DNA of 64,000 nt from Macrostomum lignano. Lineage: Eukaryota. Shown piece by piece: positions 1-41,301 of this stretch (positions are counted from its first letter, which is position 1; each line of letters begins with the position of its first letter). Made by a program: the position numbers and the translations under genes. The stretch spans positions 1-64,000 of the forward strand of contig NIVC01002260.1 in NCBI GenBank assembly GCA_002269645.1, written 5' to 3'. The notes beneath the pieces were generated by a model, which was not told where the DNA came from, made no database searches, and saw only the letters and a program-made list of their open reading frames with translations.

Positions 1-573
1 CCGGCGCTGCTTCTGGCCGGCGAATCGCATCTGCCGGAACTCCCAGAACAGCGACTTCAGCTCCGCCAGGCGAAACGCCGGCTTTGTCTCAACGCACTGA
101 GGTCACTCCGCCTCCCCTCTCCAGCAGCTCCTGCCGGGACTTCACTTTCCTCCGCTCCAGAAACTTCACGAGCTGCCGGTCCGTGTTGCGCCGCCTTCAC
201 GAGTTTTCTCCAGCGCTCTTGGCCCTTTTCTTCGAGGGCCTCCTCGCCAGCCGCTGCTGTAGGCGCTCTCGCGCGGTTCCAAAGCTTGGCGTTGTCCAGC
301 ACCTTCAGGAGCTCGTTGGTGGGAAAGCGCTGCCTCCGAACCCGGCTCGGTCGATGATATCTTGCGATGCTCGACACTGCTGCACATCCGTGACCTGCTG
401 CACCTCGATGAAGTAGTCCCGCAGGCACCTGCGCGTTTTTTGTCTCTTAAAAAAGGTCACGAGATCCTGGCTGACCGGCCGGCTGCCGATTTCCGCCGCA
501 TAGCCGCTCTCGCACTGAGACCCGCGCAGTTGCGGGTTTCTGAGGCGGACTGGAAATCGCTCAGTTCGGACAT
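1..573 (-). pseudogene. Frameshifted (or mis-sequenced) paralog of the adjacent adaptor-like family, probably with two copies of the helical domain; runs off the window edge
   Basis: ATG at 573 (MSELSDFQ). Switching frames yields family-like segments: CESGY, SQDLVTFFKRQKTRRCLRDYF, QRFPTNELLKVLDN, PRESAYSSG, TDRQLVKFLERRKVK and KPAFRLAELKSLFWEFRQMR. These resemble the SLxxFLxxxxxRxL / KFxxxELxxAL segments and the (D/E)S(G/A)Y motif of the genes at 861-4608. Several frameshifts are needed. Confidence 0.5.
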
Positions 574-860
574 GATCGCCCGAGATGGTTCGCTGCTTGG
601 CTACGTGGCGGTTCTGAGTCTTGGCTGGCTGGCTGCTTCGTCATATTTTTTATATCTTGGGTTCATTCCGCATTATAGTGCCTCCCCCTAAAATATCTGT
701 GACTAATAATACCCTCTAAGTGGGCTTTTGTTGTCACAATGTACAGTGCAGACTCGTGCACAATGCCCGGCATAATTTTTATATTTAAAATAGAGCTGGC
801 AGACAGATGCGCCTCCATAGTTTTTGCCCAGAACCGCCGCTTCATCCAAGCAGCTCAGAG

Positions 861-1769
861 ATGAGTGACGTGAGTAGGGCGATTCAGTCCTGGCAGGGCG
901 ACGCGCGGGTGAAGAAGTTCATCATCAAGTCCTGCCCGAAGGGCGACAGCCTCGGCCAGTTCCTCCGGGATGAGAATCTGCGAAGTCTCAACAAGAAAAT
1001 TGCCAAACAGAAAAATGCGAAATTCGCTATTAAAGATGTTGACGCGGCTGTGAACCATCTCAGGGACAGCTGGGCTGCCAAGATGTCGCAAGCCGCACGA
1101 GCGGAGCCGGGCTACGATAGCCTCGCCGAATCCGGCGGCCGAGCGGAGTCGGGCTACGATAGCCTCGCCGAATCCCCCTGCCGCAGCTCAGCCTCTGAAG
1201 CCAGCGCCACCCAGACTTGCAGAAGCGTCTCCTCTCTGGCCAACCGGCCGCTGCCGCCAGTGCCATCAGAGCGGCGGGACTCCGACCGCGGCTACCAGAC
1301 TCAGTCAGGCAGCCTGTCTGATGAGGACTCGCAGGCTGCCGGAGCTGCAGCAGCCCTAGCTGCGACCGCGGAGCCGAGCGTCCAGCCTCCGCGGCCGCAG
1401 CCGAGACGCTCTGCAGTCAGGGTGAGTCACAATGATGCCGCGAGCAGCTCCTGCGGTGCCGCCGAGGCTGCCGAGCAGCTGGTGGCGGACTCTGAGCAGG
1501 ACTCGGCTGGCCGCACCTGGTCGGAGGCCGCGGCAGTCAGAGCTCCGCAGGCCCGGCCGCGGCTCAGCTTGGCCCGTCGTTCCAGCGAGACTCGTGGCGG
1601 CGATGACGCGTCCAGCCTCTCGGGACCCGCCGCCACCGCTGCGGCCCCGCCATCGATCGGTCGGACGCCGGTCTGCCAGAACGGCTTCTTCAACATCCAC
1701 GGCGTCAAAAACGAGATCGATGTCGACCTGGAGGCTGTGAAAATGTTGATGGACTTCAAATCGAAATGA
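861..1769 (+). CDS. Uncharacterised adaptor-like protein, family member 1 (302 aa, intronless)
   Basis: GC3-rich ORF. The N-terminal ~75 aa align by eye with 2371-3105 (WQGDxxVKKF...SLxxF...KF...HLR). A low-complexity Ser/Ala/Pro tail follows, and AATAAA lies at ~1827. Start chosen by alignment to the paralog; the in-frame ATG at 807 is an alternative. Confidence 0.8.
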   Translation: MSDVSRAIQSWQGDARVKKFIIKSCPKGDSLGQFLRDENLRSLNKKIAKQKNAKFAIKDVDAAVNHLRDSWAAKMSQAARAEPGYDSLAESGGRAESGYDSLAESPCRSSASEASATQTCRSVSSLANRPLPPVPSERRDSDRGYQTQSGSLSDEDSQAAGAAAALAATAEPSVQPPRPQPRRSAVRVSHNDAASSSCGAAEAAEQLVADSEQDSAGRTWSEAAAVRAPQARPRLSLARRSSETRGGDDASSLSGPAATAAAPPSIGRTPVCQNGFFNIHGVKNEIDVDLEAVKMLMDFKSK

Positions 1770-2370
1770 TGACCTTCTGATTCATATTTTGCACTGCTCA
1801 ATTGGTCATTTTTTCTCTGTAAAATGAAATAAAAACAATAAATCTTTTCGCGCGATATCTTTTCAAAAATATATTCGAATAACCTCATTGAAATAGTTGA
1901 TCATCGTTTTTTTATTTCTGAGATCCGAATTGGATTGTAAAGTTTCTGTTGTCCTTGCATTTCGTTAACCTTGCCGTGCTGGCGCTGGCCTCGATGCAGT
2001 AAGAGTTTGCAAAATAGTCAAGGCTATTTTTAGAAACCATTGTTGGGAATTTCAAACAGAAGAGCTAATAGTGTCTAATAGAGGCACAACCCTTTTGCCC
2101 AACCCAACCCAACCCTTCTGACCAACCCCAAATGTTTATTCAGGCACCTGACGTCAGGGCCTATTAGGTAGGTGCGAATGTCAAGGTACTTTTGTAATTT
2201 TTTTTTATTCCTGACAATGTTTATTCCGTGTTATTGGAACTGCGGCCTACGGTTCTGTGCTTATTAAATGATATGACAACCCGCAGCCAGCGGCTACCTC
2301 GTATTAAATTTTTTTGCTCCTGATACACTTATAAATGCGCTGCAGACTTTCCAGTACTTAGCGCTCGGAC

Positions 2371-3105
2371 ATGCCAAGCCAGGTGGTCCAGGAGATTCGC
2401 TGCTGGCAGGGCGACCCAGCCGTCAAAAAGTTCGAGTCCGCCTGCTCGAAGTCGACCAGCCTGCAGGCGTTCTTCAGCGAGCGCAAGGATCAGCGACTAT
2501 TGAAGAAGTTCCACGATCAGAAGCCGCAGAAGTTCGAGCGCAACCAGCTGCTAGATGCCCTGCAGCACCTCCGGAACTGCCTGAGTCAGCGGCAACAGCG
2601 CGAGAACGCCACCGGAAGCGCCGCCGGAAGCGCCGCCAGAAGCGCCGCCGGAAGCGCCGCCGGAAGCGCCGCCGGAAGCGCCGCCGGAAGCGCCGCCGGA
2701 AGCGCCGCCGGAAGCGCCATCGGAAGCGTCGAAACCGGCTACTGCAGCGTGAGCACCAGCTCAAGTCTTCCCTTGGACGCAGCTGCCGACCCATCGCTCG
2801 GTGGGCCCGCGGCCTCCGTTCTCAGCCCGGTGGATCCGCAGCCGGCCGAGCCTGTCTACGACGAGCTGTACCCGCGCCGGCGGCTCCCTGCGGCACCAGC
2901 AGCTGTTGAAGCGCCGAAGCCGCGGTCTCGCGCCTCCCTGGCGACGCCTGGCGCCAATCTGGTGGGCTGCGCCTCGCCAACTCCGCCGGTGCCGGCGCCG
3001 CGAGCCTCGAGTGACGCGCGCTGGCGGCAGAGCAGCGGCATCAATATTTCTATAACTTGTCCTGTCCAGCTGCAGACTGAGTGTTATCAAGGACGACTGA
3101 ACTAA
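2371..3105 (+). CDS. Uncharacterised adaptor-like protein, family member 2 (244 aa, intronless)
   Basis: Intact ORF; N-terminal domain paralogous to member 1; (GSAA)n linker, ETGY and EPVYDEL motifs, Pro-rich tail; acceptor-like tttccag just upstream of the ATG. Confidence 0.8.
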   Translation: MPSQVVQEIRCWQGDPAVKKFESACSKSTSLQAFFSERKDQRLLKKFHDQKPQKFERNQLLDALQHLRNCLSQRQQRENATGSAAGSAARSAAGSAAGSAAGSAAGSAAGSAAGSAIGSVETGYCSVSTSSSLPLDAAADPSLGGPAASVLSPVDPQPAEPVYDELYPRRRLPAAPAAVEAPKPRSRASLATPGANLVGCASPTPPVPAPRASSDARWRQSSGINISITCPVQLQTECYQGRLN

Positions 3106-3780
3106 GGAGGAAGAGACACTTAGAGGAAAATAGTAGTATTTGCAGCAGGACAGTCCCACAACCAGTACGCTGGGGCAGTTCTGCCCATTCCGCTGACCCC
3201 TGAGCACATAGAAGTCCTGACTTTCTAATCATCAAGCATGTGCGCTCGTCTGTGCCTTTGGGGGGGGGTTGGCCCTCATGGTTGTGAATTGCGCGAAAAC
3301 CATACACAAAGCCCCAAGTGAACGTGGCCAGGGTGATGCGAGGGTCAGACGCCAAAATGATTTACAAGGAGTGAATATTTCGCAGCCCGAATTCCAGTGG
3401 AATTTATTTATTCTTAATCTTCTACTTAAGCTGCTCTTAGCTATCATATCCCTGATTTTTAAGCCAAATTATTAGAGTCAAATTCATCTTATTGACAGCC
3501 TGTCACCTCACGGTTCGTGTAAATCAATTGTTCAAGTATAGCAGATGTTGAATTGCCATGCAGTTTCATGCGATCTTGCCTGTCCCGTTTGCAGATCTTT
3601 TCAGTAGTTTTTGCAGTTCATTTTTTTCAATTTAAGCGTAGTTTTAATAAGGCACTTAGTAAGCCGCCCTTACTAGTCAGTGTCTAATTATAGACCTATT
3701 GTACATTTAGTAATTTGCACGAGCGTACAGCCTAAAAATGCCGAGCGCTCTCCCTTACAGCCGCACCGACAGCCATCGCG

Positions 3781-4608
3781 ATGAGCTCAAATGCGCTCTT
3801 TCTGATCGACATCGTCCGCGACTCGGGCGGCAGCCGGGAGGCCGGGAATTTCGTCATCAAGAACTTGCCGAAGAACCTCACGGCGAAAGACTTCCTGGAC
3901 AAGAACTACAGCAGGCGGCTGTCTCGTCAGTTCGAGGGCATCAAGAAACAGCCGTGCTCGCAGCGGGAGTTCCAGCAGCTCCTCGGCAAAATGAGGCGGC
4001 TCAGCCAGGCCTCAGTGAGCGGCGGCGAGCGAGACTCCGCCTACGACAGCTCGACAATTTCATCCCGCGCCTCCAGTGCCAACCAGCTGGTGGCGGCAAA
4101 GGCGGCGGAGGCGGCGGAGGCGAAGGCGGCGGAGGCGGCCAAGGCGGAGGCGGCCAAGGCGGAGGCAGCCAAGGCGGAGGCAGCCAAGGCGGAGGCGGCC
4201 AAGGCGGAGGCAGCCAAGGCGGAGGCGGCCAAGGCGGAGGCGGCCAAGGCGGAGGCGGCCAAGGCGGAGGCGGCCAAGGCGGAGGCGGCCAAAGGCAACT
4301 GGGAAGCCACGCGGGTGGTGCAGCCGGCGCAGCGGCTCGGAGCTCCGCCGCCGATTCTGACGCCGGGCTCGGAGAGGCCCGGAGGCGAGCCGCAGCGGTT
4401 GGCTCAGCCGCGGCTGCCCACGGTGCCACCGCAGGTGGCAGATCGGCAGCAGCCGCCGCCTCCGCCGCCGCCGCCATCCGCACCGGCACCTCAGCCGCAG
4501 CCGCAGCCGCAGCCGCAGCCGCAAGCGATCTTCAGGCCAGGCAGAGTCAGGCAGAGCGGTGCCATCAACGTCGTGGGCCACAGGACCAGCATCGCGGTGC
4601 GCGACTAA
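3781..4608 (+). CDS. Uncharacterised adaptor-like protein, family member 3 (275 aa; true start may be ATG 3738 with a 1-nt error near 3800)
   Basis: GNFVIKNLPK aligns with KKFIIKSCPK of member 1; DSAY motif, (AEAAK)n repeat, Pro/Gln-rich tail. Codons from 3738 to ~3800 look coding in another frame, suggesting a frameshift in the ttt run. Confidence 0.7.
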   Translation: MSSNALFLIDIVRDSGGSREAGNFVIKNLPKNLTAKDFLDKNYSRRLSRQFEGIKKQPCSQREFQQLLGKMRRLSQASVSGGERDSAYDSSTISSRASSANQLVAAKAAEAAEAKAAEAAKAEAAKAEAAKAEAAKAEAAKAEAAKAEAAKAEAAKAEAAKAEAAKAEAAKGNWEATRVVQPAQRLGAPPPILTPGSERPGGEPQRLAQPRLPTVPPQVADRQQPPPPPPPPSAPAPQPQPQPQPQPQAIFRPGRVRQSGAINVVGHRTSIAVRD

Positions 4609-5059
4609 GCGGAGATTTAAGGCCGGTGAACTGCGCTGTACATTAACTTTTCTGAATGCCAAACTGACATTAGCCTACTGACTGACCCTGTGTACATTAT
4701 CCAGCATGCGAATAATAAATTTATGATCCGTTCGCTCACAGTATGTAAACTTCTTTTCTGTTGCAAACAATAGCTCTTGGTCCCGCCTTGCCGTTACTTG
4801 AGGAGAGCATCAAAGCAGATGGGGCTGCTACAGTGCAGTGGCAGCGCTAACGAGCTGCTCCGCTCAAGCTCAAAAACGGGAATCACCAAAGCCTCAGATT
4901 TTTAAAAAAGTATCGCTTCGCACAAAGCACACCTGTCCTCCGCGTGCCTTTGTTCGCGCCAAGCTCCTGGAAACGTTGCGTTCAGACCCTGCCTGCCTCC
5001 TTGCCTGCTGCTCTCTTCACTGATAAACACGGCACCGATCTCGTTAGCTCAGACTGCCT

Positions 5060-5270
5060 TATGCTCTGCCTTCTGCTCTGCCCTCTGCTCTGCCTTCTGC
5101 TCTGCCTTCTGCTCTGCCTTCTGCTCTGCCCTCTGCTCTGCCTTCTGCTCTGCCCTCTGCTCTGCCTTCTGCTCTGCCTTCTGCTCTGCCTTCTGCTCTG
5201 CCTTCTGCTCTGCCTTCTGCTCTGCCTTCTGCTCTGCCTTCTGCTCTGCCCTCTGCTCTGCCTTCTGCTC
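5060..5270. repeat. 12-bp tandem repeat (CTCTGCCTTCTG)n
   Basis: Directly visible, about 17 copies. Confidence 0.95.
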
Positions 5271-6011
5271 TCTCCTCCTCCCTTACCTTCTTGAGACTTC
5301 TTGACCCCCCCCACAGCCTCAGATCTCAGGTCTCAGCAGCCCCAGCTCCCCCATCTCAGCAGCTGCCCCATCCCGCAAAATGTGAAAGGCCTCGGCAGAC
5401 CAAAGCAAGCAGTGGTGGGAAAATTCTCCCAACATGGGAGGCTGACCGGACGCTGCCGAGAAGCTGTCTCCACTGTTTTATCGCGAGTTCGAGCGGCGGC
5501 AGGCCGATCAGAATAAATTACTTATCCAAGCACCGAAGCTCCGCAGCTGCCGACTGTTTATTCAGAATTTATCAGCCCCGACCGGCCGCTGCCGCTCCGC
5601 CGATCAAAGCGGAGCTCGGTTCGATTTTGCACTTTTAGCTGCGAAACAAAAAGATTGGAGAAGGTGGATGAACTGAGCAATACAGAGAAGAGGTTTGAGC
5701 AGCAATGAGCCGCGCTGCACGAACCGAGTTATGAAAAACTGGCACTTCTCACCGCCCTTCTCTCCCAGCGGCCTCTGCGCCGCTTTCTTCGCCTTAACAG
5801 AGTTGGGGAGGAGCGCGGGCCGAGGAGCGTCCCCATTCAGTCCGGGAAATATTAGATTTTGCAACCCCCCCCCCCAACTGCAGCTCCCGCCAGGGCTGGG
5901 TGCTGGGCGCTCGTGTCATTTGCTTGATAATGGGGGGGGTCCACCTGCACTGCAGTGCGGCTCCCTGCGTGCGGGACTGGCTGGGTGCGAGCAGGGAGTG
6001 GGAGCGGCCAA

Positions 6012-6390
6012 GTTACAGTGTGTTAGCGAGCCTGTTACAGTGTGTTAGCGAGCCGATACAGTGTGTTAGCGAGCCTGATACAGTGTGTTAGCGAGCCTGT
6101 TACAGTGTGTTAGCGAGCCTGATACAGTGTGTTAGCGAGCCTGATACAGTGTGTTAGCGAGCCTGATACAGTGTGTTAGCGAGCCTGATACAGTGTGTTA
6201 GCGAGCCGATACAGTGTGTTAGCGAGCCTGTTACAGTGTGTTAGTGAGCCTGTTACAGCAGGTGTTCGGGAGGCTGTTACAGCAAGTGTTCGGGAGGCTG
6301 TTACAGCAGGTGTTCGGGAGGCTGTTACAGCAGGTGTTCGGGAGGCTGTTACAGCAGGTGTTCGGGAGGCTGTTACAGCAGGTGTTCAGA
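6012..6390. repeat. Compound minisatellite: ~22-24-bp TACAGTGTGTTAGCGAGCCTG units grading into 24-bp TTACAGCAGGTGTTCGGGAGGCTG units
   Basis: Directly visible. Confidence 0.9.
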
Positions 6391-6994
6391 AAGCCTCAGG
6401 TGCTGGATGGACACATGAATTCATGACCAGCTGTCTTCGGGCTGTGCTCTCGCATATATTTTGCACATTGTCCGTCTGTCTCTGCTCGGGCATTCGCGAT
6501 TTCCCAGCATCACGTGATGGAGCCCTCAAATTCAGGACGCCCGGCTGCATCAGATGAGGCTGGGCCAGGTGGAGAAAGGGTGGGGAGGGCTGAGCAGTTT
6601 GAGCTGCACGCTCATTTCACACCTTCTGAATTTTCCCACGGATTAACCCACAGTTCGACACCTTGCCAGGGGATCTGGGGATGAGGCGGCAGGTAACGAG
6701 GGCAGCGGGACGATCCAGCATCTCCGAATCCCAGACTCGATAATTCCATCATGCTTTATTGATGCCGAAGACTGCAGGACCTCCTCCCCAATGATGGGAC
6801 GCGGAGGCTGGCATTCTTCTCGCTCTCTCAAAGGCTGCCAACAGTCAGTGCCAAGTAATCCCTGCTATTCGCATCCCCGGCAGAGCTGTCCTTGCTCCCG
6901 TGCTCACGTTCTGCCACCCTCGAACTGGCATTTTTTATAACCGGGCCTTAACCCAAACCCCGTGTGTCTCAATCACTGACCTCTACCCCTGGTG

Positions 6995-8200
6995 CAGCTG
7001 CTGAGATGGGGGAGATGCTGAGATGGGGAGCTGCTGAGATGGGGCAGCTGCTGAGATGGGGGAGATGCTGAGATGGGGAGCTGCTGAGATGGGGCAGCTG
7101 CTGAGATGGGGGAGATGCTGAGATGGGGAGCTGCTGAGATGGGGCAGCTGCTGAGATGGGGGAGATGCTGAGATGGGGAGCTGCTGAGATGGGGCAGCTG
7201 CTGAGATGGGGAGATGCTGAGATGGGGAGCTGCTGAGATGGGGCAGCTGCTGAGATGGTGAGCTGCTGAGTCGGGGGAGCTGCTGAGATGGGGAGATGCT
7301 GAGATGGGGAGATGCTGAGATAGGGAGCTGCTGAGATAGGGCAGCTGCTGAGATGGGGGAGATGCTGAGATGGTGAGCTGCTGAGATGGGGCAGCTGATG
7401 AGATGGGGGAGATGCTGAGATGGTGAGCTGCTGAGATGGGGAGATGCTGAGATGGGGAGCTGCTGAGATGGGGGAGATGCTGAGATGGGGAGCTGCTGAG
7501 ATGGGGCAGCTGCTGAGATGGGGAGATGCTGAGATGGGGGAGATGCTGAGATGGGGGAGATGCTAAGATGTGGAGATGCTAAGATGGGGAGATGCTGAGA
7601 TGGTGAGCTGCTGAGATGGGGCAGCTGCTGAGATGGGGGAGATGCTGAGATGGGGAGATGCTAAGATGGGGGAGATGCTGAGATGGGGAGATGCTAATAT
7701 GGGGAGATGCTAAGATGGGGAGATGCTAAGATGGGGGAGATGCTGAGATGGGGAGATGCTAAGATGGGGAGATGCTAAGATGGGGAGATGCTGAGATGGG
7801 GGAGATGCTGAGATGGGGAGATGCTAAGATGGGGAGATGCTAAGATGGGGAGATGCTGAGATGGTGAGCTGCTGAGATGGGGCAGCTGCTGAGATGGGGG
7901 AGATGCTGAGATGGGGAGATGCTAAGATGGGGGAGATGCTGAGATGGGGGAGCTGCTGAGATGGGGGAGCTGCTGAGATGGGGGAGATGCTGAGATGGGG
8001 GAGCTGCTGAGATGAAGGAGATGCTGAGATGGGCAGCTGCTGAGATGAGGAGATGCTGAGATGGGGAGCTGCTGAGATGGGGAGATGCTGAGATGCTCAG
8101 ATGGGGGGCTCTGAGATGAGGGAGCTGCTGAGACGGGGGAGCTGCTGAGATGGGGGAGCTGCTGAGATGGGTCAGCTGCTGAGATGGGAGAGCTGCTGAG
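6995..8200. repeat. Long degenerate minisatellite built from GCTGAGATGGGG(A)G(A/C)T units (~15-16 bp)
   Basis: Directly visible, ~1.2 kb. Confidence 0.95.
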
Positions 8201-13944: not shown

Positions 13945-15519
13945 GGCTGCAGTGCGAGCTCGGGTGGTGCGGCCGGGCCACTGCCACTGGCGAAGTCCTT
14001 TTTCACTGGCACGAGCGCGCAGCTCTACTGGCCTGCGCGGCCCGGCCAATAAGACCGGGGCTGCCCCCCCCCCACCCACGGGGCGGCTCTCTGACGCCGC
14101 GGTAGGCCCCGGGGAAGAGCTGAGCTGCCGGGAGCGCGATTGAAAGGAGCTCAGAGTGTGTGCTGTGGCAACAACTCAATTAATATGTCATTCCAAGCTT
14201 TCAGCTCGCGCACTGTTCCCACTTCATCAGTCCATATTGCGGCCCCGGCGTCCCAGCCTCGCATTTAGTCGGTGGCTGATGAGGCGACTGAGCTGGTCAG
14301 ATCCTGTTTGCCCTGAGCTGTGCGCGATTTCTCTAGACTGCCAGCAGCCCCCCCCCCCCGGCGCGCGACAGACCGGCCGGGCAGGTGCCGGCCGAGCATA
14401 AATCACCCCTGCTCAGAGCTCACCACATCGTGTTTCCCGGCACAGCAGGCTGAGTGGGCGAGTGAGAGTGCTGCAAATTGGCTTCTCAGCTGCCGGCCTC
14501 ACGCGCCCGCACTTTCAATCCGTTTCCACCTGCCCCTCCGCCGCGGGCCGGGACTCGCGCCAAGCACAGTTTCTGTCGCCGCCTTCGTGACAGGCGGGAA
14601 GTTGAATCGAATTCAGTGAGCCGAAGCAGGGGGGGGGTGGAAGCCAGAGGCAACTGCTTCATCACGGGCTTCCCAGCCTGCTAGCCGCTACTTGGCAAGA
14701 TCGATTGCGGCTGCGAGGGCTGGGGGAGGGGATAATTTTCCAAGAAGCGCCGCTCTGAGTTTTACAAGTGAAGCCCGAGCAGTTCTTGAGCGTCACGGCA
14801 GCCGGTGTTGGAGCCCGCGCTAATTTTAGTTGAAGAGCCGGACCTCTCGCGGTTGATCCGGGATGGCGACAGCTCCGTTCCGAGTGCTCGGCTGAGCAGG
14901 TCTCAAAATCTGCTTTCAAGTCCTCCCAGCATGAAACAGTGCGGAGATCAGCCCGGGCGGGGAGCAGAGTGGGGTAGCAACTACAAAGAGAATGCCCCTC
15001 ATCCCCAAGCGGATGTTCGTGTCTTGGGGCCGCAGGTACTGCGTCCTGAGGTACCCTCTAGCGGGATCGGTGGCGGCCAGCTGCCCTGCCCGGCCTCGCA
15101 ATAAATTTTACTCGCTTTAAAATTTCTGTCCAGGGGGAGGGGGATCTGCGGATTCGCGGCCAGATTGGAAGCGCCGCCTGATTTCTGCTTTGCCGGCTTT
15201 CGGGGGATTATCGACCGAGAATCAAGACATTTGTCCCGCGCGCTGTTTATCTCGCTCTCAATTTCCGCAGTTAGCGCGGCGGAGGCGACAGAGAGTGTCG
15301 GCAGGAGCAGAGAAAAATTGTCGAATTCCCCAATCGGGATTTGAAAATTCCCCCCAAAACTAGCCCAGAGAGTTTTGTGCAGGAAAGCGCAGACGCATTT
15401 GACCTCAAAGCTTTCCATCTAACATGGCGAAACTAAACGTAGACAAAACTTCAGAAGATACGAGCGGCAACTGCTTCAGTATCTTCTGCAATCTCGGCTG
15501 CAGGGCTCTTTTCAGTGCC

Positions 15520-21437: not shown

Positions 21438-22811
21438 ATGGGCGCCGCACCAGCAGCTGGTGTGGCCATCGCTTCGGTGATGAAGCTCGGGCATAAGATC
21501 GTGGAGCTGCAGTTTGCCATCCAGAGACCGGACACATTCAACTGGACAAATGGCAGCTGCCAGAAGCTCAGCGCCAGCTCGCAGGCAACGGAGCATTCAA
21601 CATTTTTCACCTGGATCTGGGGGGCCAGATACCTGCTGCCCGTGCTAGGCGGCGCCCTGACCGTCTCCGGCATCGGCTATGTCCGGGTGCTGAAGTTGGG
21701 CGGCTGTCTCATGCTGCTGTCCGCCACTTTGATGTCTGTTGCAGTTCAAGTCGGCTGGATGTGCACTCGGCCGCAGCTCTGCTTGTTCCTGTGGCTCCTG
21801 CTGCCGCTCACCTTCGCTCTGGTCCATCCAAACGTCATGCACGCGATTTTCCGCTGGCATCGGCCCGGGTCGCGCAACTGTACGATTGTGTCGACCGTCT
21901 ACTGCGGCTCGGCTGTGCTGGGCGAGTGCATCGGCATGCTGCTGCCGGATGTCGCTGGCTCTGGCGTCACCTTCACCGGCGCTGCCATCTCTGTGCTGTT
22001 CCTGTGGCTGTCCCTCAGCCTGCGCGAGGAGCTGGAGTACTCCGTGCCACCAGTGTCGCGCCTGTTCCGCTACTGCTTCCTGTTTGCCGCGCTTATCGTC
22101 TTTGTGATCTCCGTGTCGGACTGCCGGTCCGCAGTCTACCAAGCCGAGATCCGGTACTGGCTGCTGTCTGTCGGCAGCTCGCCTAGTGCGAGCCGCTGGC
22201 TGAAAATTGCGTCGCCCGAGGTTGTCAAACTAATTAGCCTGGCGGCCACCTGCGCCGGGACGGCCATCCTTGCCTGGCGCCTGCCAGTCAGGCGGCTTCC
22301 GAGGCGGCAGCGAGTTCAGGCCGGAATCCTGCTGGAGAGTGGCGTGTCCATCGGCCTGATTCTGGTCAGCTTTCTGCAGCTGCCCAGCGAGACCGCCGTC
22401 TGTGCGGTCTACACGGCCGCCTCCTGTCTGGACGGAGTCGCCACCGGAGTGACGATGGTGGCCGCCTACGAGCTGATGGACGCCATGTCAGACAGGAGCG
22501 CCAAGCCGCTGGTCATTGGCATCGTGTTCACCGTGCTGGGGCTGGCAAACATCCTCGGTCAGCTGATGCTAGCGCTGTTGCGCTCAGTCCCCGTCGCAAA
22601 TCCCGTGCTGCTGCCGCGGGAGGGCAGCCGACCGCTGTTCTACGTGTACCACGTGATCATCCTGCTGCTGCTGCTGCTGTGCCTGGCCTACCACCGCTGC
22701 TTCGCCTTCCGGCTAGCCTCCACAGCCGTTATCGAAGAAGATGAAGAGGATGGTCGGGAAGCAGCCGAGAGGCCTCTAATCGAAGGCGGCCAGCAGGCGG
22801 CCGGCAGATGA
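21438..22811 (+). CDS. Divergent POT/PTR2 (SLC15-like) MFS transporter, paralog A (457 aa, intronless)
   Basis: Polytopic hydrophobic ORF. YLLPVLGGAL...G matches POT TM2 (YLTPILGALIADSWLG in PepT1). TM4, TM5, TM7 and TM10 also align with POT motifs. AATAAA downstream. Confidence 0.8.
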   Translation: MGAAPAAGVAIASVMKLGHKIVELQFAIQRPDTFNWTNGSCQKLSASSQATEHSTFFTWIWGARYLLPVLGGALTVSGIGYVRVLKLGGCLMLLSATLMSVAVQVGWMCTRPQLCLFLWLLLPLTFALVHPNVMHAIFRWHRPGSRNCTIVSTVYCGSAVLGECIGMLLPDVAGSGVTFTGAAISVLFLWLSLSLREELEYSVPPVSRLFRYCFLFAALIVFVISVSDCRSAVYQAEIRYWLLSVGSSPSASRWLKIASPEVVKLISLAATCAGTAILAWRLPVRRLPRRQRVQAGILLESGVSIGLILVSFLQLPSETAVCAVYTAASCLDGVATGVTMVAAYELMDAMSDRSAKPLVIGIVFTVLGLANILGQLMLALLRSVPVANPVLLPREGSRPLFYVYHVIILLLLLLCLAYHRCFAFRLASTAVIEEDEEDGREAAERPLIEGGQQAAGR

Positions 22812-32650: not shown

Positions 32651-32979
32651 AACACCGATTCTGAAAATAATCTAAAAGTTCAGTTAGATGTGATTTTCTA
32701 TAAACAGTTATTTAGATTATAGTGTAACAATGTTTCCAACACGAAAGTATCTAATAGTCCTCACCTATTCAAAATAGCAACTGCAAATACATCAATGATG
32801 GCTATGGAGTATGAAGTGCCAAATATGCAAGCTATGCGCGTGTATTCAAAGCGGATCACACAAATATGTGGCGTTGCTATTCCTCTTTGCTAATCAGCCT
32901 CTGTCCGCTAAATCTGCACGCTAAATCCATTCAACGAGCTCTTCATAGACATTTCGAAAGAGACTGAGAGGTTTCAAAA

Positions 32980-34035
32980 CGGAGTTGAGGCACAGAGCAG
33001 AGTCCGGATCCGAGCGGAGTTGAGGCACAGAGCAGAGCCCGGATCCGAGCGGAGTTGAGGCACAGAGCAGAGCCCGGATCCGAGCGGAGTTGAGGCACAG
33101 AGCAGAGCCCGGATCCGAGCGGAGTTGAGGCACAGAGCAGAGTCCGGATCCGAGCGGAGTTGAGGCACAGAGCAGAGTCCGGATCCGAGCGGAGTTGAGG
33201 CACAGAGCAGAGCCCGGATCCGAGCGGAGTTGAGGCACAGAGCAGAGCCCGGATCCGAGCGGAGTTGAGGCACAGAGCAGAGCCCGGATCCGAGCGGAGT
33301 TGAGGCACAGAGCAGAGTCCGGATCCGAGCGGAGTTGAGGCACAGAGCAGAGTCCGGATCCGAGCGGAGTTGAGGCACAGAGCAGAGCCCGGATCCGAGC
33401 GGAGTTGAGGCACAGAGCAGAGCCCGGATCCGAGCGGAGTTGAGGCACAGAGCAGAGTCCGGATCCGAGCGGAGTTGAGGCACAGAGCAGAGCCCGGATC
33501 CGAGCGGAGTTGAGGCACAGAGCAGAGTCCGGATCCGAGCGGAGTTGAGGCACAGAGCAGAGCCCGGATCCGAGCGGAGTTGAGGCACAGAGCAGAGCCC
33601 GAATCCGAGCGGAGTTGAGGCACAGAGCAGAGTCCGGATCCGAGCGGAGTTGAGGCACAGAGCAGAGTCCGGATCCGAGCGGAGTTGAGGCACAGAGCAG
33701 AGTCCGGATCCGAGCGGAGTTGAGGCACAGAGCAGAGCCCGGATCCGAGCGGAGTTGAGGCACAGAGCAGAGTCCGGATCCGAGCGGAGTTGAGGCACAG
33801 AGCAGAGTCCGGATCCGAGCGGAGTTGAGGCACAGAGCAGAGTCCGGATCCGAGCGGAGTTGAGGCACAGAGCAGAGTCCGGATCCGAGCGGAGTTGAGG
33901 CACAGAGCAGAGTCCGGATCCGAGCGGAGTTGAGGCACAGAGCAGAGCCCGGATCCGAGCGGAGTTGAGGCACAGAGCAGAGCCCGGATCCGAGCGGAGT
34001 TGAGGCACAGAGCAGAGCCCGGATCCGAGCGGAGT
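32980..34035. repeat. 35-bp satellite (GAGTTGAGGCACAGAGCAGAG[T/C]CCGGATCCGAGCG), ~30 copies
   Basis: GGATCC recurs with period 35 (33006, 33041 and onward); nearly homogeneous, with one main C/T variant. Confidence 0.97.
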
Positions 34036-34842
34036 CGAGGTGCGGAGTGGGGTCGGAATTTTGGGCCAGTTTACGTATCTGCGGGTAAATAAAGGCCTTG
34101 ACTTGGTTTTATTGTGGAGTATCATTCATAAAGTCACTGTTACTTGGTACAGGGCCGCTTGACAATCGAAAGCGTATCTACTATCATATTAGGGTGTTAA
34201 TAGCTAAGAAACGTCAGCAAAAGACGCTTGAGCACAAGGTCGCAGCTAAATTGACACACTGGTACAATCTCTGTGCCAGTACAAATGAGGGCACACCAAT
34301 ACGAACTGGGACCAGCAGTTAAAGAATTTACCAGGCGATCAGTTGTTGCTCTACCCGTGCACTTTGCTGGGCAAATAGCGCATAATGAGACAGCAGCTGA
34401 TTAGATACGGGCTATTGGGCTCATCGAGAGCTTTGACTCGCCTGATAACACGAAAGGTTTCGCCTGCGTGCCAAGGAGCTGGGCTGGAGTTGAATTAAAT
34501 TATCATATTTCATTGCTTTGCCTGAAAACAAAGACAACTCGAAGAGCGGCTGCTCAAGCCAACACAAGTTTATTGCACAGAATTGGAAATGCGTTTAGGA
34601 AGAGGCAGGTCTGTAATCAAAAGTGAGAGCTCGAGCTATCGAGCCTGAGCTGCGCCAAATATGGGAGTGGAGCAACGATAAGAAGAAAGAAATCGACCAA
34701 AAGGAGCAAGCAGACGCGATAAGAGAAAGTTAGCGCTATTCGTTACTTAAACAAGCGTACTTTGATTCCCCGTGTCTGCCGCTTCACTAAGTATTCGTTT
34801 ATAGAATTTTTTTGATTCGCAGTACCACCCGCAGGTGTATCA

Positions 34843-36964: not shown

Positions 36965-38338
36965 ATGCAAATCCACGCTCTGAGAGGCGTTCTCTTGGCT
37001 TGCTTGATGAAGCTTTGCACCAAGATAACTGAGACGTTATTTACGATAGAAGATCCATCAAACTTTCGGCTGTCGAACGAAGCCGGCTCTTTAAATGAAT
37101 CGTGCCATTTCTCCACTGAGCTATCAGCAAACAACTCTCAAGCATCAATCACCACGTGGATCTACACCTTAAGATACTCACTGCCAGTACTTGGTGGGCT
37201 GATCTCCAGCGTTTGGTTTGGAACTGTCGCCGTACTTCAGATCGGTGGGATTATTATGCTGCTGTCGACTGTCCTGCTATCCGTATCGGTGTACCTCGGA
37301 TTCATGTGCCAAGCATCGCCAATAATTACAGTCACATGGCTACTGCTTCCAGTGTTCTACGGGCTCACTCAACCGAGCATAGTGCACTGCATGTTCAGCT
37401 GGTTCAAGCGGCCGAAGCTTTTCACAATTGTATCAGCAATATATTATGCAGTTTCCGTAACTGGAAAATACATCGCGCTGTTGTTGTTGCCACTGAACAA
37501 AGCTGAGTGGTTGGGACCTAATTCGTCTGTCATCTACATTGCAATAAGCGTACTGTTCGTTGCCTTGCCGTCTTTCTTCCCGGTAGTGTCCCGCGAAGAA
37601 CCATTCGAAATGCCAACCCTATTTAGAATGAGCAGGTACTTCCAGATCTTCTCTGCCCTCATAATATTCCTTTTTGCCGTCGACGACACCAGATCTGCTG
37701 TCTACGCAACGGAACTTGAGTATTATCTCAATGCGACAGCGAATTTCGAGACCTACTTCTGGCTTTCCCCGAAAACACAAAACCTCACTGCCATGCTGGT
37801 CAGCTGCGTGGCTCTGATAATTGCTGCCTCCATCAGCCGACGGCAGCTTCCCGTTGGGCTTCGGATGCAGGCCGGGATCCTCCTCGGAGCTGCGGTTGCA
37901 GCGAGTCTCACCGTCTTCACCGCGGTCGCTAAAAAGCCCGGCTACTCGGCTGTGGTCACTGTTTACACGGCAGCCTCTATCCTAGATGCAGCTGCTGAGG
38001 TTCTGGTCATGACCGGTGCCTACGACCTGCTTCAGCAGATTACGCCTGGTGGCACCGAGTCTTTCGTCATCGGGATCATGTTCACTGTGTGGGGTCTGGC
38101 CAACCTCGCTAGCCAGGTGGCCCTTCTAACGATGTCTCGATGGCTGCAGCCGCTGGACGACGATCATCCCAAACTGTTTGTGTACCACCTCGTGTCGGTC
38201 ATGCTGCTTCTGGTCTGCTCTGCTTACCACAAAATCATTGCTCTGCCTCTGGCAGCTCAGGTGACCCCTACAGAAATATTGAATGAGGAAGAGACAGTAA
38301 GTGAGCTGCAACCTCTGCTGAGTTCAGATGACGTATGA
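36965..38338 (+). CDS. Divergent POT/PTR2 (SLC15-like) transporter, paralog E (457 aa, intronless)
   Basis: Intact ORF, same motifs as paralogs A-D; tail ELQPLL; AATAAA at ~38361. Confidence 0.85.
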   Translation: MQIHALRGVLLACLMKLCTKITETLFTIEDPSNFRLSNEAGSLNESCHFSTELSANNSQASITTWIYTLRYSLPVLGGLISSVWFGTVAVLQIGGIIMLLSTVLLSVSVYLGFMCQASPIITVTWLLLPVFYGLTQPSIVHCMFSWFKRPKLFTIVSAIYYAVSVTGKYIALLLLPLNKAEWLGPNSSVIYIAISVLFVALPSFFPVVSREEPFEMPTLFRMSRYFQIFSALIIFLFAVDDTRSAVYATELEYYLNATANFETYFWLSPKTQNLTAMLVSCVALIIAASISRRQLPVGLRMQAGILLGAAVAASLTVFTAVAKKPGYSAVVTVYTAASILDAAAEVLVMTGAYDLLQQITPGGTESFVIGIMFTVWGLANLASQVALLTMSRWLQPLDDDHPKLFVYHLVSVMLLLVCSAYHKIIALPLAAQVTPTEILNEEETVSELQPLLSSDDV

Positions 38339-38630: not shown

Positions 38631-41301
38631 TGTAGAGAGCGAAGCCGAGAGAGAGAAAGTTGTGTTGTGTGTAGCCGATAAAGCCTCAATCCATTGTAGG
38701 CTCTGTGCGATCGATTTATATATTTAGCAGCGACCCTGCAGTCGAGACTGAGTACATTAACAACAGAAAGCCAAGAATATTGGATGTACATCGGAAATGC
38801 ACACCAGGACTAAAAACACTTATTATGCAAGCACTGGGCAGCAGGTGCCTACAATTCTCCCCAACCAGAGAGATCCCAGGGGATAAAAAAAACGAGCTCA
38901 ATTATTCAGTTACTACCGGCCCAAACCCCAAAGCAATCAAAGCGGCCCGCCCACGCACAAAAACCCTAGGATCACAATTTGTAGCTGAGCACTCTGTTAC
39001 GGGCAGCTCTTGGATGTTCTCGCGTGGCGATGCTACCGCTGGGTAGACCGGCGGGCTCTCCGGCAGGTTGGCCGGCAGGTTGGCCGGCAGGCTCTTCGGC
39101 AGGCTGGCCGGCAGGCTGGCCGGCAGGCTGGCCGGCAGGCTCTTCGGCAGGTTGGCCGGCAGGTTCGCCGGCAGGTTTGCCGGCAGGCTCTCCGGCAGGC
39201 TGGCCGGCAGGCTCTCCGGCAGGTTGGCCGGCAGGTTGGCCGGCAGGCTGGCCGGCAGGCTCTCCGGCAGGCTGGCCGGCAGGCTGGCCGGCAGGCTCTC
39301 CGGCAGGCTGGCCGGCAGGCTGGCCGGCAGGCTCTCCGACCAGGGGCCGCAGCTGCGAGACGTGGCGCATGCAGGACTGTTCGCCGCGTTGCAGGACACA
39401 CGTGTTTCCCTGGACCTGCTTGACTGTCCAAGGATGTGGCTCGAACGGCAGCTGCAGTTTGTTACGTGGCTGCTTCTTTCGCAGAACTTTGTTGCCGACT
39501 CTGACGCCGTGCTCCTTGACGCCCTTGCGATCATCGAAGCGCGCCTTCATGTCTTGGACATAGTTTCTGTGCCAGCTCTGCACCTCTTCATGGTTAACGT
39601 CGATGAGCTGTGATGGTTTGATGGTCGGGATGCCGTCGTTCATCGTCCTGCCCATGAGTAGCTCAGCGGTGCGCGGCCGGTCGCTCGATGTGGTGTCGTG
39701 CGGAACGCCAACAGCCAGTCCTCGATAGCCTCCCGCCAGTTACGACCTTCGGCCACTGCCGTCTGAATCACTTTCCCGATGCTGCGGTTGACTCGCTCCG
39801 TCGCTCCATTGGATTCTGGGTGCAGCGGGCAGATGAGGCGGTGGTGAATGCCGTACGAAGCGAGGAAGCTGCGGAAAGCTGCCGAGCTGAATGGCGGGCC
39901 GTTGTCGGTGACCACATCAATCGGGACGCCGTACCTGCCGAACAGCCTCCGCAGGTGGGGGGTCACGCTCTCCGCCGTCGTCGAGTTGAGAAAATTGACT
40001 TCTGGGTATTTTGAAAACAAGTCGGTGGTGACCAGGAGCATCTGGCCCTGCACTGGGCCGTAGAAATCCATACCTAGTAGCAGCCAGGCACCGTCCGGAA
40101 TATCTGTCGGCCTCAATGGTGTCTGTCGCAATCCGGTGGCCGCAGCCTGGCACAGTGTGCAGACGTCGGATGGGTATTTGTCGGGGTTGTACAGCGCGAA
40201 CACATCCTCGTTGACGGAGCCGTCGGCAGCTGTGAATACAGCATTGGTGCTGATTTGCTGCTGTGGGATCCGGCTGCTGTTTGACTGCCGAGGCTGACGG
40301 CAGGCAAGAGCGAGGTGGTTGGGCTTACCGCAGTTGTGGCAGATCTTGCCCTTGGCAGCGTCGCAGGTAGCGTGGCCTTTCTCGCCGCAGCGGTAGCAGG
40401 TGCGCTGCTGCTGGTCGCCGGGCCTGCTGGTCGTCTGAGCCGGGCCACGCCTGTTCGTTCTCACCTTGTCTCACCTTGCGAGTCTGTCTTCTCCATCTGG
40501 GTGGCTTGTTCCTCTGCAGCCTCGAATGCCCTCGCCTTTCGCAAGGCCTCTTCCAGGCTGATGTTCGCCTCCTGAAGCAGCCGCCTGCGCAGCTTGTCAG
40601 AGCTGCAGGTTGCCACGAGCTGGTCTCTGATGAGCGAGTCCTTCAGCTGCTCGAAGTCGCACGGCTCTGCCGCAGTGCGCAGTCTGGCGTACCAGGACTC
40701 GATGGACTCTCCGGTGGCCTGGGTGCATAGGCGGAACTGATATCTGGCGAATACTATGTTCTTTCTTCCGTTGAAGAATGTCTTCAAAGCGTCCAGCGTC
40801 TGCTTGAGGGTGACTTGGCCGTCCTCTGTGGCCGCTGCAGGCTTGGCCTCCTCGCGGATGATGTCGGCGATTTCCTTGCCTGCTGTGTAGCTGAGTAGTT
40901 TGCACTTTTGCTTCTCGTTGGTGATGCCTGATGCATCGATGAAGTCTTCAAAGCGGTCCGCCCATTGACTCCAGCGCTTGCCCGCGTTGTGTGGGTCTGC
41001 TGATACTGAGAATGGCTCAGGTGGGGGCAGTGAGAGAAAGTTGGCTGCCATGATTTGTTTACCGCGCGGTAGGCGGCTTGCGACGCCACTGTAGAGAGCG
41101 AAGCCGAGAGAGAGAAAGTTGTGTTGTGTGTAGCCGATAAAGCCTCAATCCATTGTAGGCTCTGTGCGATCGATTTATATATTTAGCAGCGACCCTGCAG
41201 TTGAGACTGCGTACATTAAAAACAGAAAGCCAAGAATATTGGATGTACATCGGAAATGCACACCAGGACTAAAAACACTTATTATGCAGCAGGTGCCTAC
41301 A
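38631..41301 (-). mobile_element. Gypsy-type (Mag-like) LTR retrotransposon, internally deleted (gag + integrase only)
   Basis: LTRs 38631-38853 and 41090-41301 (TG...CA; by eye 3 substitutions and one 11-bp indel). 5-bp TSD TCACC. PBS-like TGGCGTCGCAAG next to the 5' LTR; PPT GGGGAGAA next to the 3' LTR. Gag 41051-40461, zinc knuckles, integrase DFYGP / TDNGPPF / NGATER. No protease, RT or RNase H. Confidence 0.93.
39050..39335. repeat. 12-bp repeat encoding (PAGQ/PAGE)n in the integrase C-terminal tail
   Basis: Directly visible inside ORF 38972-39655. Confidence 0.9.

What the first reader, a model, noticed from the sequence alone, without database searches (positions are those of the whole stretch)
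1..4608. Tandem array of an unrecognised adaptor-like gene family (helical N-domain + Tyr motif + low-complexity linker + C-terminal beta motif)
Seen: three intronless + strand genes and a head-to-head - strand relic share a ~75-aa, helical-looking N-terminal domain (SDVSRAIQSWQGDARVKKFIIKSCPKGDSLGQFL... / SQVVQEIRCWQGDPAVKKFESACSKSTSLQAFF... / DIVRDSGGSREAGNFVIKNLPKNLTAKDFL...). After it comes a (D/E)x(G/A)Y motif (within ~15 aa in members 1 and 3, after the GSAA linker in member 2), a disordered linker and a short conserved C-terminal motif. The paralogs are very divergent from one another, which points to an old or fast-evolving expansion. I cannot assign the domain. Inference: the pattern weakly resembles a SAM domain (F...G..L...NL..L...A..HL) or a death-fold. 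Such an oligomerisation module plus signalling motifs is the layout of immune adaptors such as SLP-76, IMD and TRIF.
Basis: partly seen in the sequence, partly recalled or inferred. Interest (0 to 1): 0.75.

Follow-up and report, generated by a model that had tools for sequence, protein, structure and literature searches.

The report
Flatworm-only adaptor-like gene cluster
A cluster of four related genes, so far found only in the flatworm Macrostomum lignano, encodes proteins with a small helical head, a long floppy middle carrying short docking motifs and a conserved tail motif; the family is real and uncharacterised, but neither the immune-adaptor idea nor any other function is shown.

Summary
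The window is Macrostomum lignano contig NIVC01002260.1 from base 1. It carries three tandem single-exon genes: g1 861-1769, g2 2371-3105 and g3 3781-4608. Each encodes the same parts in the same order:
- a basic N-terminal domain of about 80 aa, predicted as five helices;
- a [DE]-[STP]-[GA]-Y-x-S motif;
- a low-complexity disordered linker with an R-x-L-P-x-[VA]-P (SH3-ligand-like) motif;
- a C-terminal motif [VW]-x-Q-[NS]-[GS]-x-Φ-N-[IV] (a Gly two residues later in g0, g1 and g3).

The '- strand relic' (g0, 573-1) is probably not a relic. It is cut by the contig start, where assembly-type indels pile up. The overlapping contig and the homeologous locus show a fourth member with all the motifs.

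The gene models are transcript-derived. dN/dS between homeologs is 0.27 (g2), 0.33 (g3) and 0.83 (g1). No homolog was found outside M. lignano.

Pfam, PDB and Foldseek assign no family. The only decent superposition is the LEAFY SAM domain (TM 0.60, E 2.4-3.9), which is not significant. Death-fold and RHIM readings failed their tests.

The best reading is a lineage-restricted family of phospho-regulated scaffold or adaptor-like proteins. The mechanism is inferred only. Interest is modest.

The parts
1..573 (-). g0: 5' part of the fourth family member, head-to-head with g1. The ATG is at 573-571. The ESAYSS motif is at 270-253, in another frame here. The gene is cut by the contig start and frameshifted in this copy.
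   Evidence: Intact versions are in L001:8858-9847(-) and in L002. Indels are concentrated at window 1-650. The window is the start of the contig.
861..1769 (+). g1: single-exon gene of 302 aa. Two AATAAA signals follow the stop codon, at 1828 and 1837.
   Evidence: Annotated as a gene in the Mlig_3_7 assembly. 83% identical to the homeolog P0001. dN/dS is 0.83.
861..1100 (+). g1 N-terminal domain: a five-helix bundle with net charge +9.
   Evidence: AF2 helices at 3-9, 15-24, 31-34, 37-49 and 57-80; pLDDT 79-93. Charge.
1104..1163 (+). g1 tandem Tyr motifs: EPGYDS (1104-1121) and ESGYDS (1146-1163). The 15-aa unit is duplicated here and single in the homeolog.
1245..1265 (+). g1 RPLPPVP, a class-I SH3-ligand-like motif.
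1671..1724 (+). g1 C-terminal motif VCQNGFFNIHGVKNEIDV.
2371..3105 (+). g2: single-exon gene of 244 aa. The N-domain is at 2371-2610 and the (GSAA)n repeat at 2607-2728.
   Evidence: dN/dS is 0.27 overall and 0.06 in the N-domain.
2731..2748 (+). g2 Tyr motif ETGYCS, after the GSAA repeat.
2878..2898 (+). g2 RRLPAAP, SH3-ligand-like. It is preceded by PVYDELYP.
3022..3075 (+). g2 C-terminal motif WRQSSGINISITCPVQLQ.
3781..4608 (+). g3: single-exon gene of 275 aa. The N-domain is at 3781-4030, the (AKAEA)n repeat at 4128-4292 and a PQ/poly-Pro tract at 4449-4523. An AATAAA signal lies at 4714.
   Evidence: dN/dS is 0.33.
4033..4050 (+). g3 Tyr motif DSAYDS.
4411..4428 (+). g3 RLPTVP: a PxxP core with Arg one residue closer than in g1 and g2.
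4546..4599 (+). g3 C-terminal motif VRQSGAINVVGHRTSIAV.

Best explanation
**What it is (shown).** A four-gene cluster, found so far only in Macrostomum lignano and transcribed. The order is g0 on the - strand, then g1, g2 and g3 on the + strand. The same arrangement is kept in the homeologous subgenome copy.

**What the proteins look like (shown).** They have no signal peptide or transmembrane segment, so they are presumably intracellular. Each has:
- a compact, strongly basic five-helix domain of about 80 aa;
- directly after it, a conserved [DE]-[STP]-[GA]-Y-x-S motif;
- 150-200 residues of low-complexity disorder with an R-x-L-P-x-[VA]-P motif;
- near the C-terminus, a motif [VW]-x-Q-[NS]-[GS]-x-Φ-N-[IV] (a Gly two residues later in g0, g1 and g3) that is rich in beta-branched and aromatic residues and looks beta-prone.

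**How it most likely works (inferred).**
- The proteins act as phospho-regulated scaffolds or adaptors.
- The folded head binds a partner or self-associates.
- The linear motifs in the disordered region recruit other proteins. The PxxP motif would recruit an SH3 domain.
- The Tyr/Ser motif could be a pTyr docking site like SLP-76 DYES. It could also be a relaxed beta-TrCP-type DSGΦxS phosphodegron that controls turnover.
- The tail motif provides a second contact by beta-strand addition or homotypic pairing among the paralogs.
For: **Real genes**
- Gene models exist at the same coordinates in an annotation derived from transcripts (PMC5730564).
- ORFs are intact in both homeologs.
- dN/dS is 0.27 for g2 (N-domain 0.06) and 0.33 for g3 (N-domain 0.19).
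- AATAAA signals follow g1 and g3.

**Homology**.

**Architecture**
- In the AF2 full-length g1 model, the N-domain has pLDDT 82-93 and residues 90-282 fall below 50.
- N-domains carry net charge +6 to +9 and have pI 9.7-10.5.

**Motifs**
- The Tyr-motif and C-motif regexes hit only family genes in the six-frame background.
- The SH3-like regex has 4 background hits in 170,000 residues, yet occurs once in each of g1, g2 and g3.
- The beta-TrCP consensus DSGxxS and the functional variant DSGYNT are taken from PMC2287288.
Against: - No partner, expression pattern or phenotype is known.
- No member matches the strict D-S-G-x-x-[ST] degron. Members have E for D, A for G, or T for S.
- In g3 the Arg of the PxxP motif is out of class-I register.
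- g1 evolves almost neutrally between homeologs (dN/dS 0.83).
- Short motifs in Pro/Ser-rich disorder are easy to over-read.
- AF2 gives the C-motif only pLDDT 52-60, with no strand.
- The structure models rest on a 4-sequence alignment.
Confidence: 0.45

Rival explanations
1. One reading: the N-domain is a SAM or death-fold oligomerisation module, and the family are innate-immune adaptors of the SLP-76, IMD or TRIF type.
For: - The AF2 helix pattern (short, medium, short, medium, long) fits a five-helix SAM topology.
- In two independent models, the best superposition is the LEAFY SAM domain 4ude_B (TM 0.60, rmsd 3.5 A). Its SAM identity comes from PMC4844672.
- The sequence G-Y-D-S, followed by a PxxP motif, recalls SLP-76 DYES followed by a Pro-rich region. 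That recollection of SLP-76 is my own knowledge.
Against: - Foldseek E is 2.4-3.9 and probability 0.28-0.38, with 4% identity.
- No canonical SAM structure appears among the listed matches (47-55 with E <= 10).
- There are no SAM, Death, CARD, DED or PYD hits in Pfam at E <= 1.
- The model has five helices, which excludes a six-helix death fold.
- There is no SH2, TIR, death domain or kinase.
- There are no immune or induction data.
Confidence: 0.1
2. The C-terminal motif is a RHIM-like or cryptic-RHIM amyloid signalling motif. The four paralogs would co-assemble into a functional amyloid signalosome, as in RIPK1/RIPK3 or PGRP-LC/IMD.
For: - Ungapped, g0 GVNQNGGLLNIVGDDNRL matches 7 of 18 positions of human RIPK3 LVNIYNCSGVQVGDNNYL. 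The RIPK3 sequence was verified.
- The motif has alternating hydrophobic and Asn/Gly residues, and it lies in a disordered region.
- Published RHIM definitions are loose: only the Gly is invariant (PMC9387487).
Against: - The core is Φ-N-[IV]-x-G, not (V/I)-Q-(V/I/L/C)-G (PMC13506858).
- No Pfam family, RHIM included, hits any of the four tails even at E <= 10.
- A profile of the motif finds no PDB chain.
- RIPK3 and RIPK1 RHIM queries do not rank the family tails above six-frame background.
- g2 lacks the Gly.
Confidence: 0.05
3. The basic helical head is a nucleic-acid-binding (HTH-like) module. The proteins would be lineage-specific nuclear or chromatin or RNA-binding factors with a disordered effector region.
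For: - N-domains carry net charge +6 to +9 and have pI about 10.
- Low-ranked Foldseek neighbours include DNA-binding helical domains: KorA, a BEN domain, DMAP1 and a sigma factor.
Against: - All those matches have E > 4 and TM of about 0.3-0.45.
- There is no Pfam DNA-binding hit.
- No clear recognition-helix signature is present.
Confidence: 0.15
4. These are young or fast-evolving orphan ORFs with little or no conserved function. The shared 'motifs' are merely remnants of recent duplication.
For: - No homolog was found outside M. lignano in 5.8 billion clustered proteins or in an exhaustive HMMER scan.
- g1 dN/dS is 0.83.
- Low-complexity repeats vary in copy number between homeologs.
Against: - The paralogs are old: 22-37% identity in the head and unalignable linkers. 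They still keep four elements in the same order.
- Purifying selection acts on g2 and g3, most strongly on the head (ω 0.06-0.19).
- g1, g2 and g3 are intact in both subgenomes. g0 can only be reconstructed as intact by combining copies.
- The gene models are transcript-derived.
Confidence: 0.12

Closest known systems
SLP-76 family adaptors (SAM, acidic DYES tyrosine motifs, Pro-rich region, SH2)
   Same: The order of elements matches: a small N-terminal helical domain, then acidic Y-[DE]-S-type tyrosine motifs (duplicated in g1), then a PxxP motif in a disordered region.
   Different: There is no SH2 domain. The N-domain has no SAM sequence signature. There is no detectable homology. A conserved C-terminal motif is present instead. 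The comparison with SLP-76 rests on my own knowledge of its sequence, not on a tool result.
LEAFY N-terminal SAM oligomerisation domain (PDB 4UDE)
   Same: It is the best structural superposition of the AF2 model: TM 0.53-0.60, rmsd 3.5 A over 76-77 columns, with five helices.
   Different: E is 2.4-3.9 and sequence identity 4%. It comes from a plant transcription factor. None of the other listed matches is annotated as a SAM domain, so this is a resemblance in topology only.
SCF-beta-TrCP substrates with a DSGΦxS phosphodegron (Bora DSGYNT; also Emi1 and IkB)
   Same: [DE]-[ST]-[GA]-Y-x-S keeps the acidic residue, the Ser/Thr, the small residue, the aromatic residue and the distal Ser in the degron's spacing. 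A Tyr at the Φ position occurs in Bora (PMC2287288).
   Different: No member has the strict D-S-G. One copy in g1 has Pro in place of Ser. Phosphorylation and beta-TrCP binding are untested.
RHIM and cRHIM motifs (RIPK1, RIPK3, TRIF, ZBP1; Drosophila PGRP-LC and IMD)
   Same: Both are short Asn/Gly/hydrophobic motifs that look beta-prone and sit in a disordered region. A Gly follows the hydrophobic core and an Asn lies 3 residues later, in g0 and g1.
   Different: The core tetrad is not met. Profile and search tests were negative.

Membership tests
SAM domain | Significant match to a SAM sequence profile (Pfam SAM_1, SAM_2, SAM_PNT, SAM_LFY and others). | tested here: not met
   hmmscan of g1, g2 and g3 against Pfam-A at E <= 1 lists no SAM family.
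SAM domain | Five-helix bundle that superposes significantly on solved SAM structures. | tested here: inconclusive
   AF2 gives five helices. Only the LEAFY SAM 4ude_B superposes (TM 0.60, E 2.4-3.9, probability 0.28-0.38). None of the other listed matches is annotated as a SAM domain.
SAM domain | Head-to-tail or other homotypic oligomerisation. | not testable with these tools
   This needs SEC-MALS or a crystal structure, or multimer prediction, which is not available here.
Death-fold (DD, DED, CARD, PYD) | Six-helix bundle of about 85-95 aa with a match to a death-fold profile or structure. | tested here: not met
   The model has five helices in 80 aa. There is no Pfam hit and no death-fold chain in the Foldseek lists.
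RHIM / cRHIM | Core tetrad (V/I)-Q-(V/I/L/C)-G within an 18-25-residue motif. | tested here: not met
   The family core is Φ-N-[IV]-x-G, and g2 has Ser-Ile in place of x-G. The consensus is from PMC13506858.
RHIM / cRHIM | Detectable by the RHIM profile or by RHIM sequences above background. | tested here: not met
   Pfam lists no family, RHIM included, for any of the four tails at E <= 10. A PDB profile search finds 0 hits. hRIPK3 and mRIPK1 RHIM queries do not retrieve the family tails among the top hits in 140,000 six-frame residues.
RHIM / cRHIM | Forms amyloid or homotypic fibrils. | not testable with these tools
   This needs ThT or EM assays.
beta-TrCP phosphodegron | D-S-G-x(2,3)-[ST] (strict consensus). 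| tested here: not met
   The sequences are EPGYDS, ESGYDS, ETGYCS, DSAYDS and ESAYSS. Each deviates at 1-2 constrained positions and fits only a relaxed [DE][ST][GA]ΦxS.
beta-TrCP phosphodegron | Dual phosphorylation, then beta-TrCP binding and degradation. | not testable with these tools
   This needs phosphopeptide pull-down and half-life assays.
Class-I SH3 ligand | [RK]-x-x-P-x-x-P in an accessible region. | tested here: inconclusive
   g1 RPLPPVP and g2 RRLPAAP fit. g3 RLPTVP has the PxxP core, but the Arg is one residue out of register. All three lie in predicted disorder (for g1).
SLP-76 family | C-terminal SH2 domain plus N-terminal SAM. | tested here: not met
   There are no SH2 or SAM hits in Pfam.

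The most novel reading that the evidence does not exclude
The family is a flatworm-specific class of signalling adaptors. The head would be a divergent SAM-like oligomerisation domain. The shared C-terminal motif would be a homotypic (RHIM-like or beta-zipper) assembly element, letting the four paralogs co-polymerise into a phospho-switched signalosome. If so, this would be an independently evolved counterpart of the SLP-76/LAT or IMD/TRIF adaptors, in a phylum whose innate signalling adaptors are poorly known.
Probability: 0.07. Interest if true: 0.75.

Novelty: new member of a known kind. Interest (0 to 1): 0.3.

Why it matters
If the adaptor reading is right, the cluster would be a lineage-specific signalling module in a regenerating flatworm that can be made transgenic. 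It would also show how folded-head-plus-linear-motif scaffolds arise and diversify by tandem duplication.

As it stands, the finding is a cleanly delimited orphan family. It comes with a testable motif grammar and a corrected annotation: g0 is a fourth member, not a relic. It is useful for M. lignano annotation but not surprising, because taxonomically restricted, disorder-rich families are common in flatworm genomes.

Tried and rejected
**Family and homolog searches that found nothing**
- Pfam scans of full proteins, of g0 and of the tails gave only noise, such as Mitofilin on the AKAEA repeat and Shadoo on the GSAA repeat.
- PDB sequence searches with the N-domain and tail profiles gave noise or nothing.
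- Three word-indexed searches of 5.8 billion proteins found only M. lignano copies.
- An exhaustive HMMER scan of 1.84 billion representatives with the N-domain profile found only the M. lignano g2 fragment, plus four repeat proteins at E 3e-5 to 6e-4. I reject those four. Their scores are summed over 4-7 similar internal repeats, so one chance match of about 10 bits is multiplied.

**Structure searches**
- Foldseek against PDB (twice) and against BFVD gave no hit with E < 1.

**RHIM**
- I considered this seriously after finding g0's tail, and rejected it as a membership claim.

**Expression evidence**
- Locus tags were not found in full texts. They were also absent from the supplements of PMC5730564 and PMC12896417.
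- Exact-protein look-ups of the window's ORFs in public assemblies found nothing beyond the Mlig_3_7 contigs.

**Other checks**
- The alternative 302-aa ORF at 3738-4646, which overlaps g3, is rejected. It is the out-of-frame reading of the GC-rich repeat, and it is not open from the same start in L001.
- dN/dS between paralogs was not attempted because they are too divergent. Homeolog pairs were used instead.
- tRNA and Rfam scans of the window were empty.

Full report
**Source and context**

The window is Macrostomum lignano DNA. The g1 ORF hits BOX15_Mlig017204g1 at 83% identity and Mlig010841g2 at 92% identity. A cluster member, P0009, lies on NIVC01002260.1. Its genes are called at 822-1769, 2371-3105 and 3799-4608, which are the window's own coordinates. 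So the window is NIVC01002260.1:1-64000, and window position 1 is a contig end.

Two further copies of the locus were fetched.
- L001 (NIVC01000020.1) is the homeologous copy. It is about 89-96% identical in DNA.
- L002 is the last 5.3 kb of contig NIVC01003958.1. It overlaps window 1-5297, with about 5 real mismatches and about 60 indels.

All three copies have the same order: a PP2C gene, then g0 on the - strand, then g1, g2 and g3 on the + strand, then minisatellites.

**Check of the observation**

The three + strand ORFs are as described: g1 861-1769 (302 aa), g2 2371-3105 (244 aa) and g3 3781-4608 (275 aa).

N-domain homology is solid for g1 and g2, with BLASTP E 4e-12. For g3 it is supported by profile methods. 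hhalign of g1+g2 against g3 gives probability 87% and E 3.9e-6 over 87 collinear columns. The HMM score is 18.0 bits, and 0 of 2000 shuffles reach it. g2 against g3 alone shows nothing.

The Tyr motif can be sharpened to [DE]-[STP]-[GA]-Y-x-S. The instances are EPGYDS and ESGYDS in g1, ETGYCS in g2, DSAYDS in g3 and ESAYSS in g0. The C-terminal motif is [VW]-x-Q-[NS]-[GS]-x-Φ-N-[IV], and a Gly follows two residues later in g0, g1 and g3 but not in g2. Regexes for both motifs hit only family genes in the six-frame translation of all three loci.

I also found a third shared linear motif, R-x-L-P-x-[VA]-P. It appears as RPLPPVP in g1, RRLPAAP in g2 and RLPTVP in g3. Its regex has 4 background hits in 170,000 six-frame residues.

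**The 'relic'**

In the window, g0 (573-1, - strand) needs at least five frameshifts. However, 21 of the roughly 60 indels between the window and L002 fall in window 1-650, and most are bases missing from the window. Beyond position 1000, the missing bases are mostly in L002, which is itself near its contig end there. This is the signature of unpolished contig ends, not of gene decay.

L002 reads g0 in a single frame from DYFIEV... to a stop codon. That reading includes ESAYSS and a tail, VNQNGGLLNIVGDDNRLNVTM, that clearly resembles g1's VCQNGFFNIHGVKNEIDV. L001 has an intact 329-aa ORF for the N-terminal two thirds.

Other evidence for g0 membership is weaker. Its head scores 6.7 bits against the g1-g3 profile, and 5 of 2000 shuffles reach that score. 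Its tail's best non-self hit among 2192 six-frame segments is g1's tail, but that hit is not significant on its own. Taken together with the shared motifs and the position in the cluster, g0 is a fourth member. It has an extra helical segment after the Tyr motif.

**Are they genes?**

- The Mlig_3_7 annotation was built from RNA-seq assemblies (StringTie, TACO, TransDecoder), not ab initio (PMC5730564). The existing gene models therefore imply transcription.
- dN/dS between window and L001 copies is 0.27 for g2 (head 0.06), 0.33 for g3 (head 0.19) and 0.83 for g1. dS is 0.06-0.08.
- g1 still keeps its ORF, with no indel across 968 aligned nt.
- AATAAA signals follow g1 and g3.
- The annotated CDS spans equal the ORFs, so the genes are single-exon.

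**Structure**

AF2 on the 4-sequence head alignment gives five helices at 3-9, 15-24, 31-34, 37-49 and 57-80. Mean pLDDT is 78.9 and pTM 0.62.

In the full-length g1 model, the head has pLDDT 82-93. Residues 90-282 are below 50, so they are predicted disordered. The tail motif reaches 52-60 with no strand, and a tail helix specific to g1 follows.

The heads are strongly basic, with net charge +6 to +9 and pI 9.7-10.5.

**Comparison with known families**

- *Pfam and PDB.* Pfam gives nothing relevant. PDB sequence searches give nothing.
- *Foldseek.* Searches against PDB and BFVD give no hit with E < 1.
- *SAM.* The one good superposition, seen in both models, is the LEAFY SAM oligomerisation domain 4ude_B (TM 0.60, rmsd 3.5 A, E 2.4-3.9). 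Its SAM identity comes from PMC4844672. None of the other listed matches is annotated as a SAM domain, so 'SAM-like topology' remains only a lead.
- *Death-fold.* Excluded by helix count and by the absence of hits.
- *RHIM.* I took this idea seriously because g0's tail matches RIPK3's RHIM at 7 of 18 positions (RIPK3 sequence verified). It failed three tests. The core tetrad (PMC13506858) is not met. Neither Pfam nor PDB profiles hit. RHIM queries do not lift the family tails above background.
- *beta-TrCP degron.* The Tyr/Ser motif fits a relaxed DSGΦxS degron. Bora's functional DSGYNT has Tyr at the same position (PMC2287288). No member has the strict D-S-G.
- *SLP-76.* The motif equally recalls SLP-76's DYES phosphotyrosine sites, which I cite from my own knowledge.

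**Distribution**

No relative was found outside M. lignano in three indexed searches of 5.8 billion proteins. An exhaustive HMMER scan of 1.84 billion representatives also found none. That scan's four marginal non-flatworm hits are internally repetitive proteins whose scores are inflated by repeats.

There is a caveat. The representative library evidently hides some M. lignano copies behind truncated or low-complexity representatives. Other Macrostomum proteomes may also be absent from the databases. So 'restricted to M. lignano' means 'not found', not 'proven absent'.

**Interpretation**

The following is shown:
- an old, divergent, transcribed four-member paralog cluster;
- a conserved domain-and-motif grammar;
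- purifying selection on g2 and g3, strongest on their heads;
- a long disordered linker.

The following is inferred. The proteins are scaffold or adaptor-like. The head would be a binding or self-association module. Phospho-regulated and SH3-type linear motifs would recruit partners. The tail would serve as a second interaction element.

I put about 0.45 on this general mechanism. I put much less on any specific version: SAM-type immune adaptor 0.10, RHIM-like amyloid 0.05, nucleic-acid binder 0.15, and essentially functionless orphan ORFs 0.12.

**Verdict**

This is a real, uncharacterised orphan family. Interest is modest unless expression or interaction data give it a role.

Noticed in passing
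window 1-5297 vs L002 7720-13019: The window's first 5.3 kb duplicates the last 5.3 kb of another contig of the same assembly (NIVC01003958.1). The two differ almost only by 1-3 nt indels, and these concentrate near each contig's end. This looks like an unjoined contig overlap with unpolished ends. It breaks g0 in the window, and g1 and g2 in L002 (P0002 and P0003 are frameshifted or partial models).
   Followed up: yes
L001 3065-6425 (+); L002 1026-4598 (+): A PP2C phosphatase gene lies just upstream of g0 in both copies, on the same strand as g1-g3. Locus tags with the suffix 'g2' for family genes (Mlig010841g2, Mlig010168g2) hint that they belong to polycistronic, trans-spliced transcriptional units.
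   Followed up: no
window 21438-22811 (+) and 36965-38338 (+): Two intronless 457-aa ORFs encode paralogous multi-pass membrane proteins (36% identity, E 2e-80). One has a sub-threshold MFS_1 hit. This is a second divergent paralog pair in the same window.
   Followed up: partly
window 49471-51369 (-) and 39640-40464 (-): These are Ty1/copia-type retrotransposon pol ORFs, with gag zinc knuckle, GAG-pre-integrase, integrase core and retroviral SH3-like domains. The second is a shorter fragment.
   Followed up: partly
window 32974-34125 (-): A 383-aa ORF with Pfam hits to Orthopox_A5L and TSP_1 coincides with a 35-bp minisatellite (32980-34040, 30 copies, 98% matches). The domain hits are most likely artefacts of translating a tandem repeat.
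   Followed up: partly
window 5054-5271, 6012-6387, 6990-8000+, and 13 further arrays: The window is dense in minisatellites with periods of 10-91 bp. The 12-mer array at 5054-5271 (18 copies) is expanded to about 1.4 kb in the homeolog L001 (about 14030-15480).
   Followed up: partly
window 1104-1163; 2607-2728; 4128-4292: Copy number differs between homeologs inside the coding repeats. The 15-aa Tyr-motif unit is duplicated in the window's g1 but single in L001. The window has 4 more GSAA units in g2 than L001. L001 has about 6 more AKAEA units in g3 than the window.
   Followed up: yes
window 3738-4646 (+): A 302-aa ORF in another frame overlaps g3 and starts at an upstream ATG. It reads the GC-rich repeat as poly-GGQGG. 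It is not open from the same point in L001, so it is not a gene, though it could mislead ORF callers that prefer the longest ORF.
   Followed up: yes
P0004, P0007: The best non-flatworm matches of the head profile are bacterial secreted proteins made of 4-5 repeats of LTEEQ..KI..K....EI.AAV..L..SWGI. That pattern overlaps helices 4-5 of the head (FLRDENLRSLNKKIAKQKNAKFAIKDVDAAVNHLRDSW). This is probably chance inflated by the repeats, but the shared helix-loop-helix pattern is curious.
   Followed up: partly
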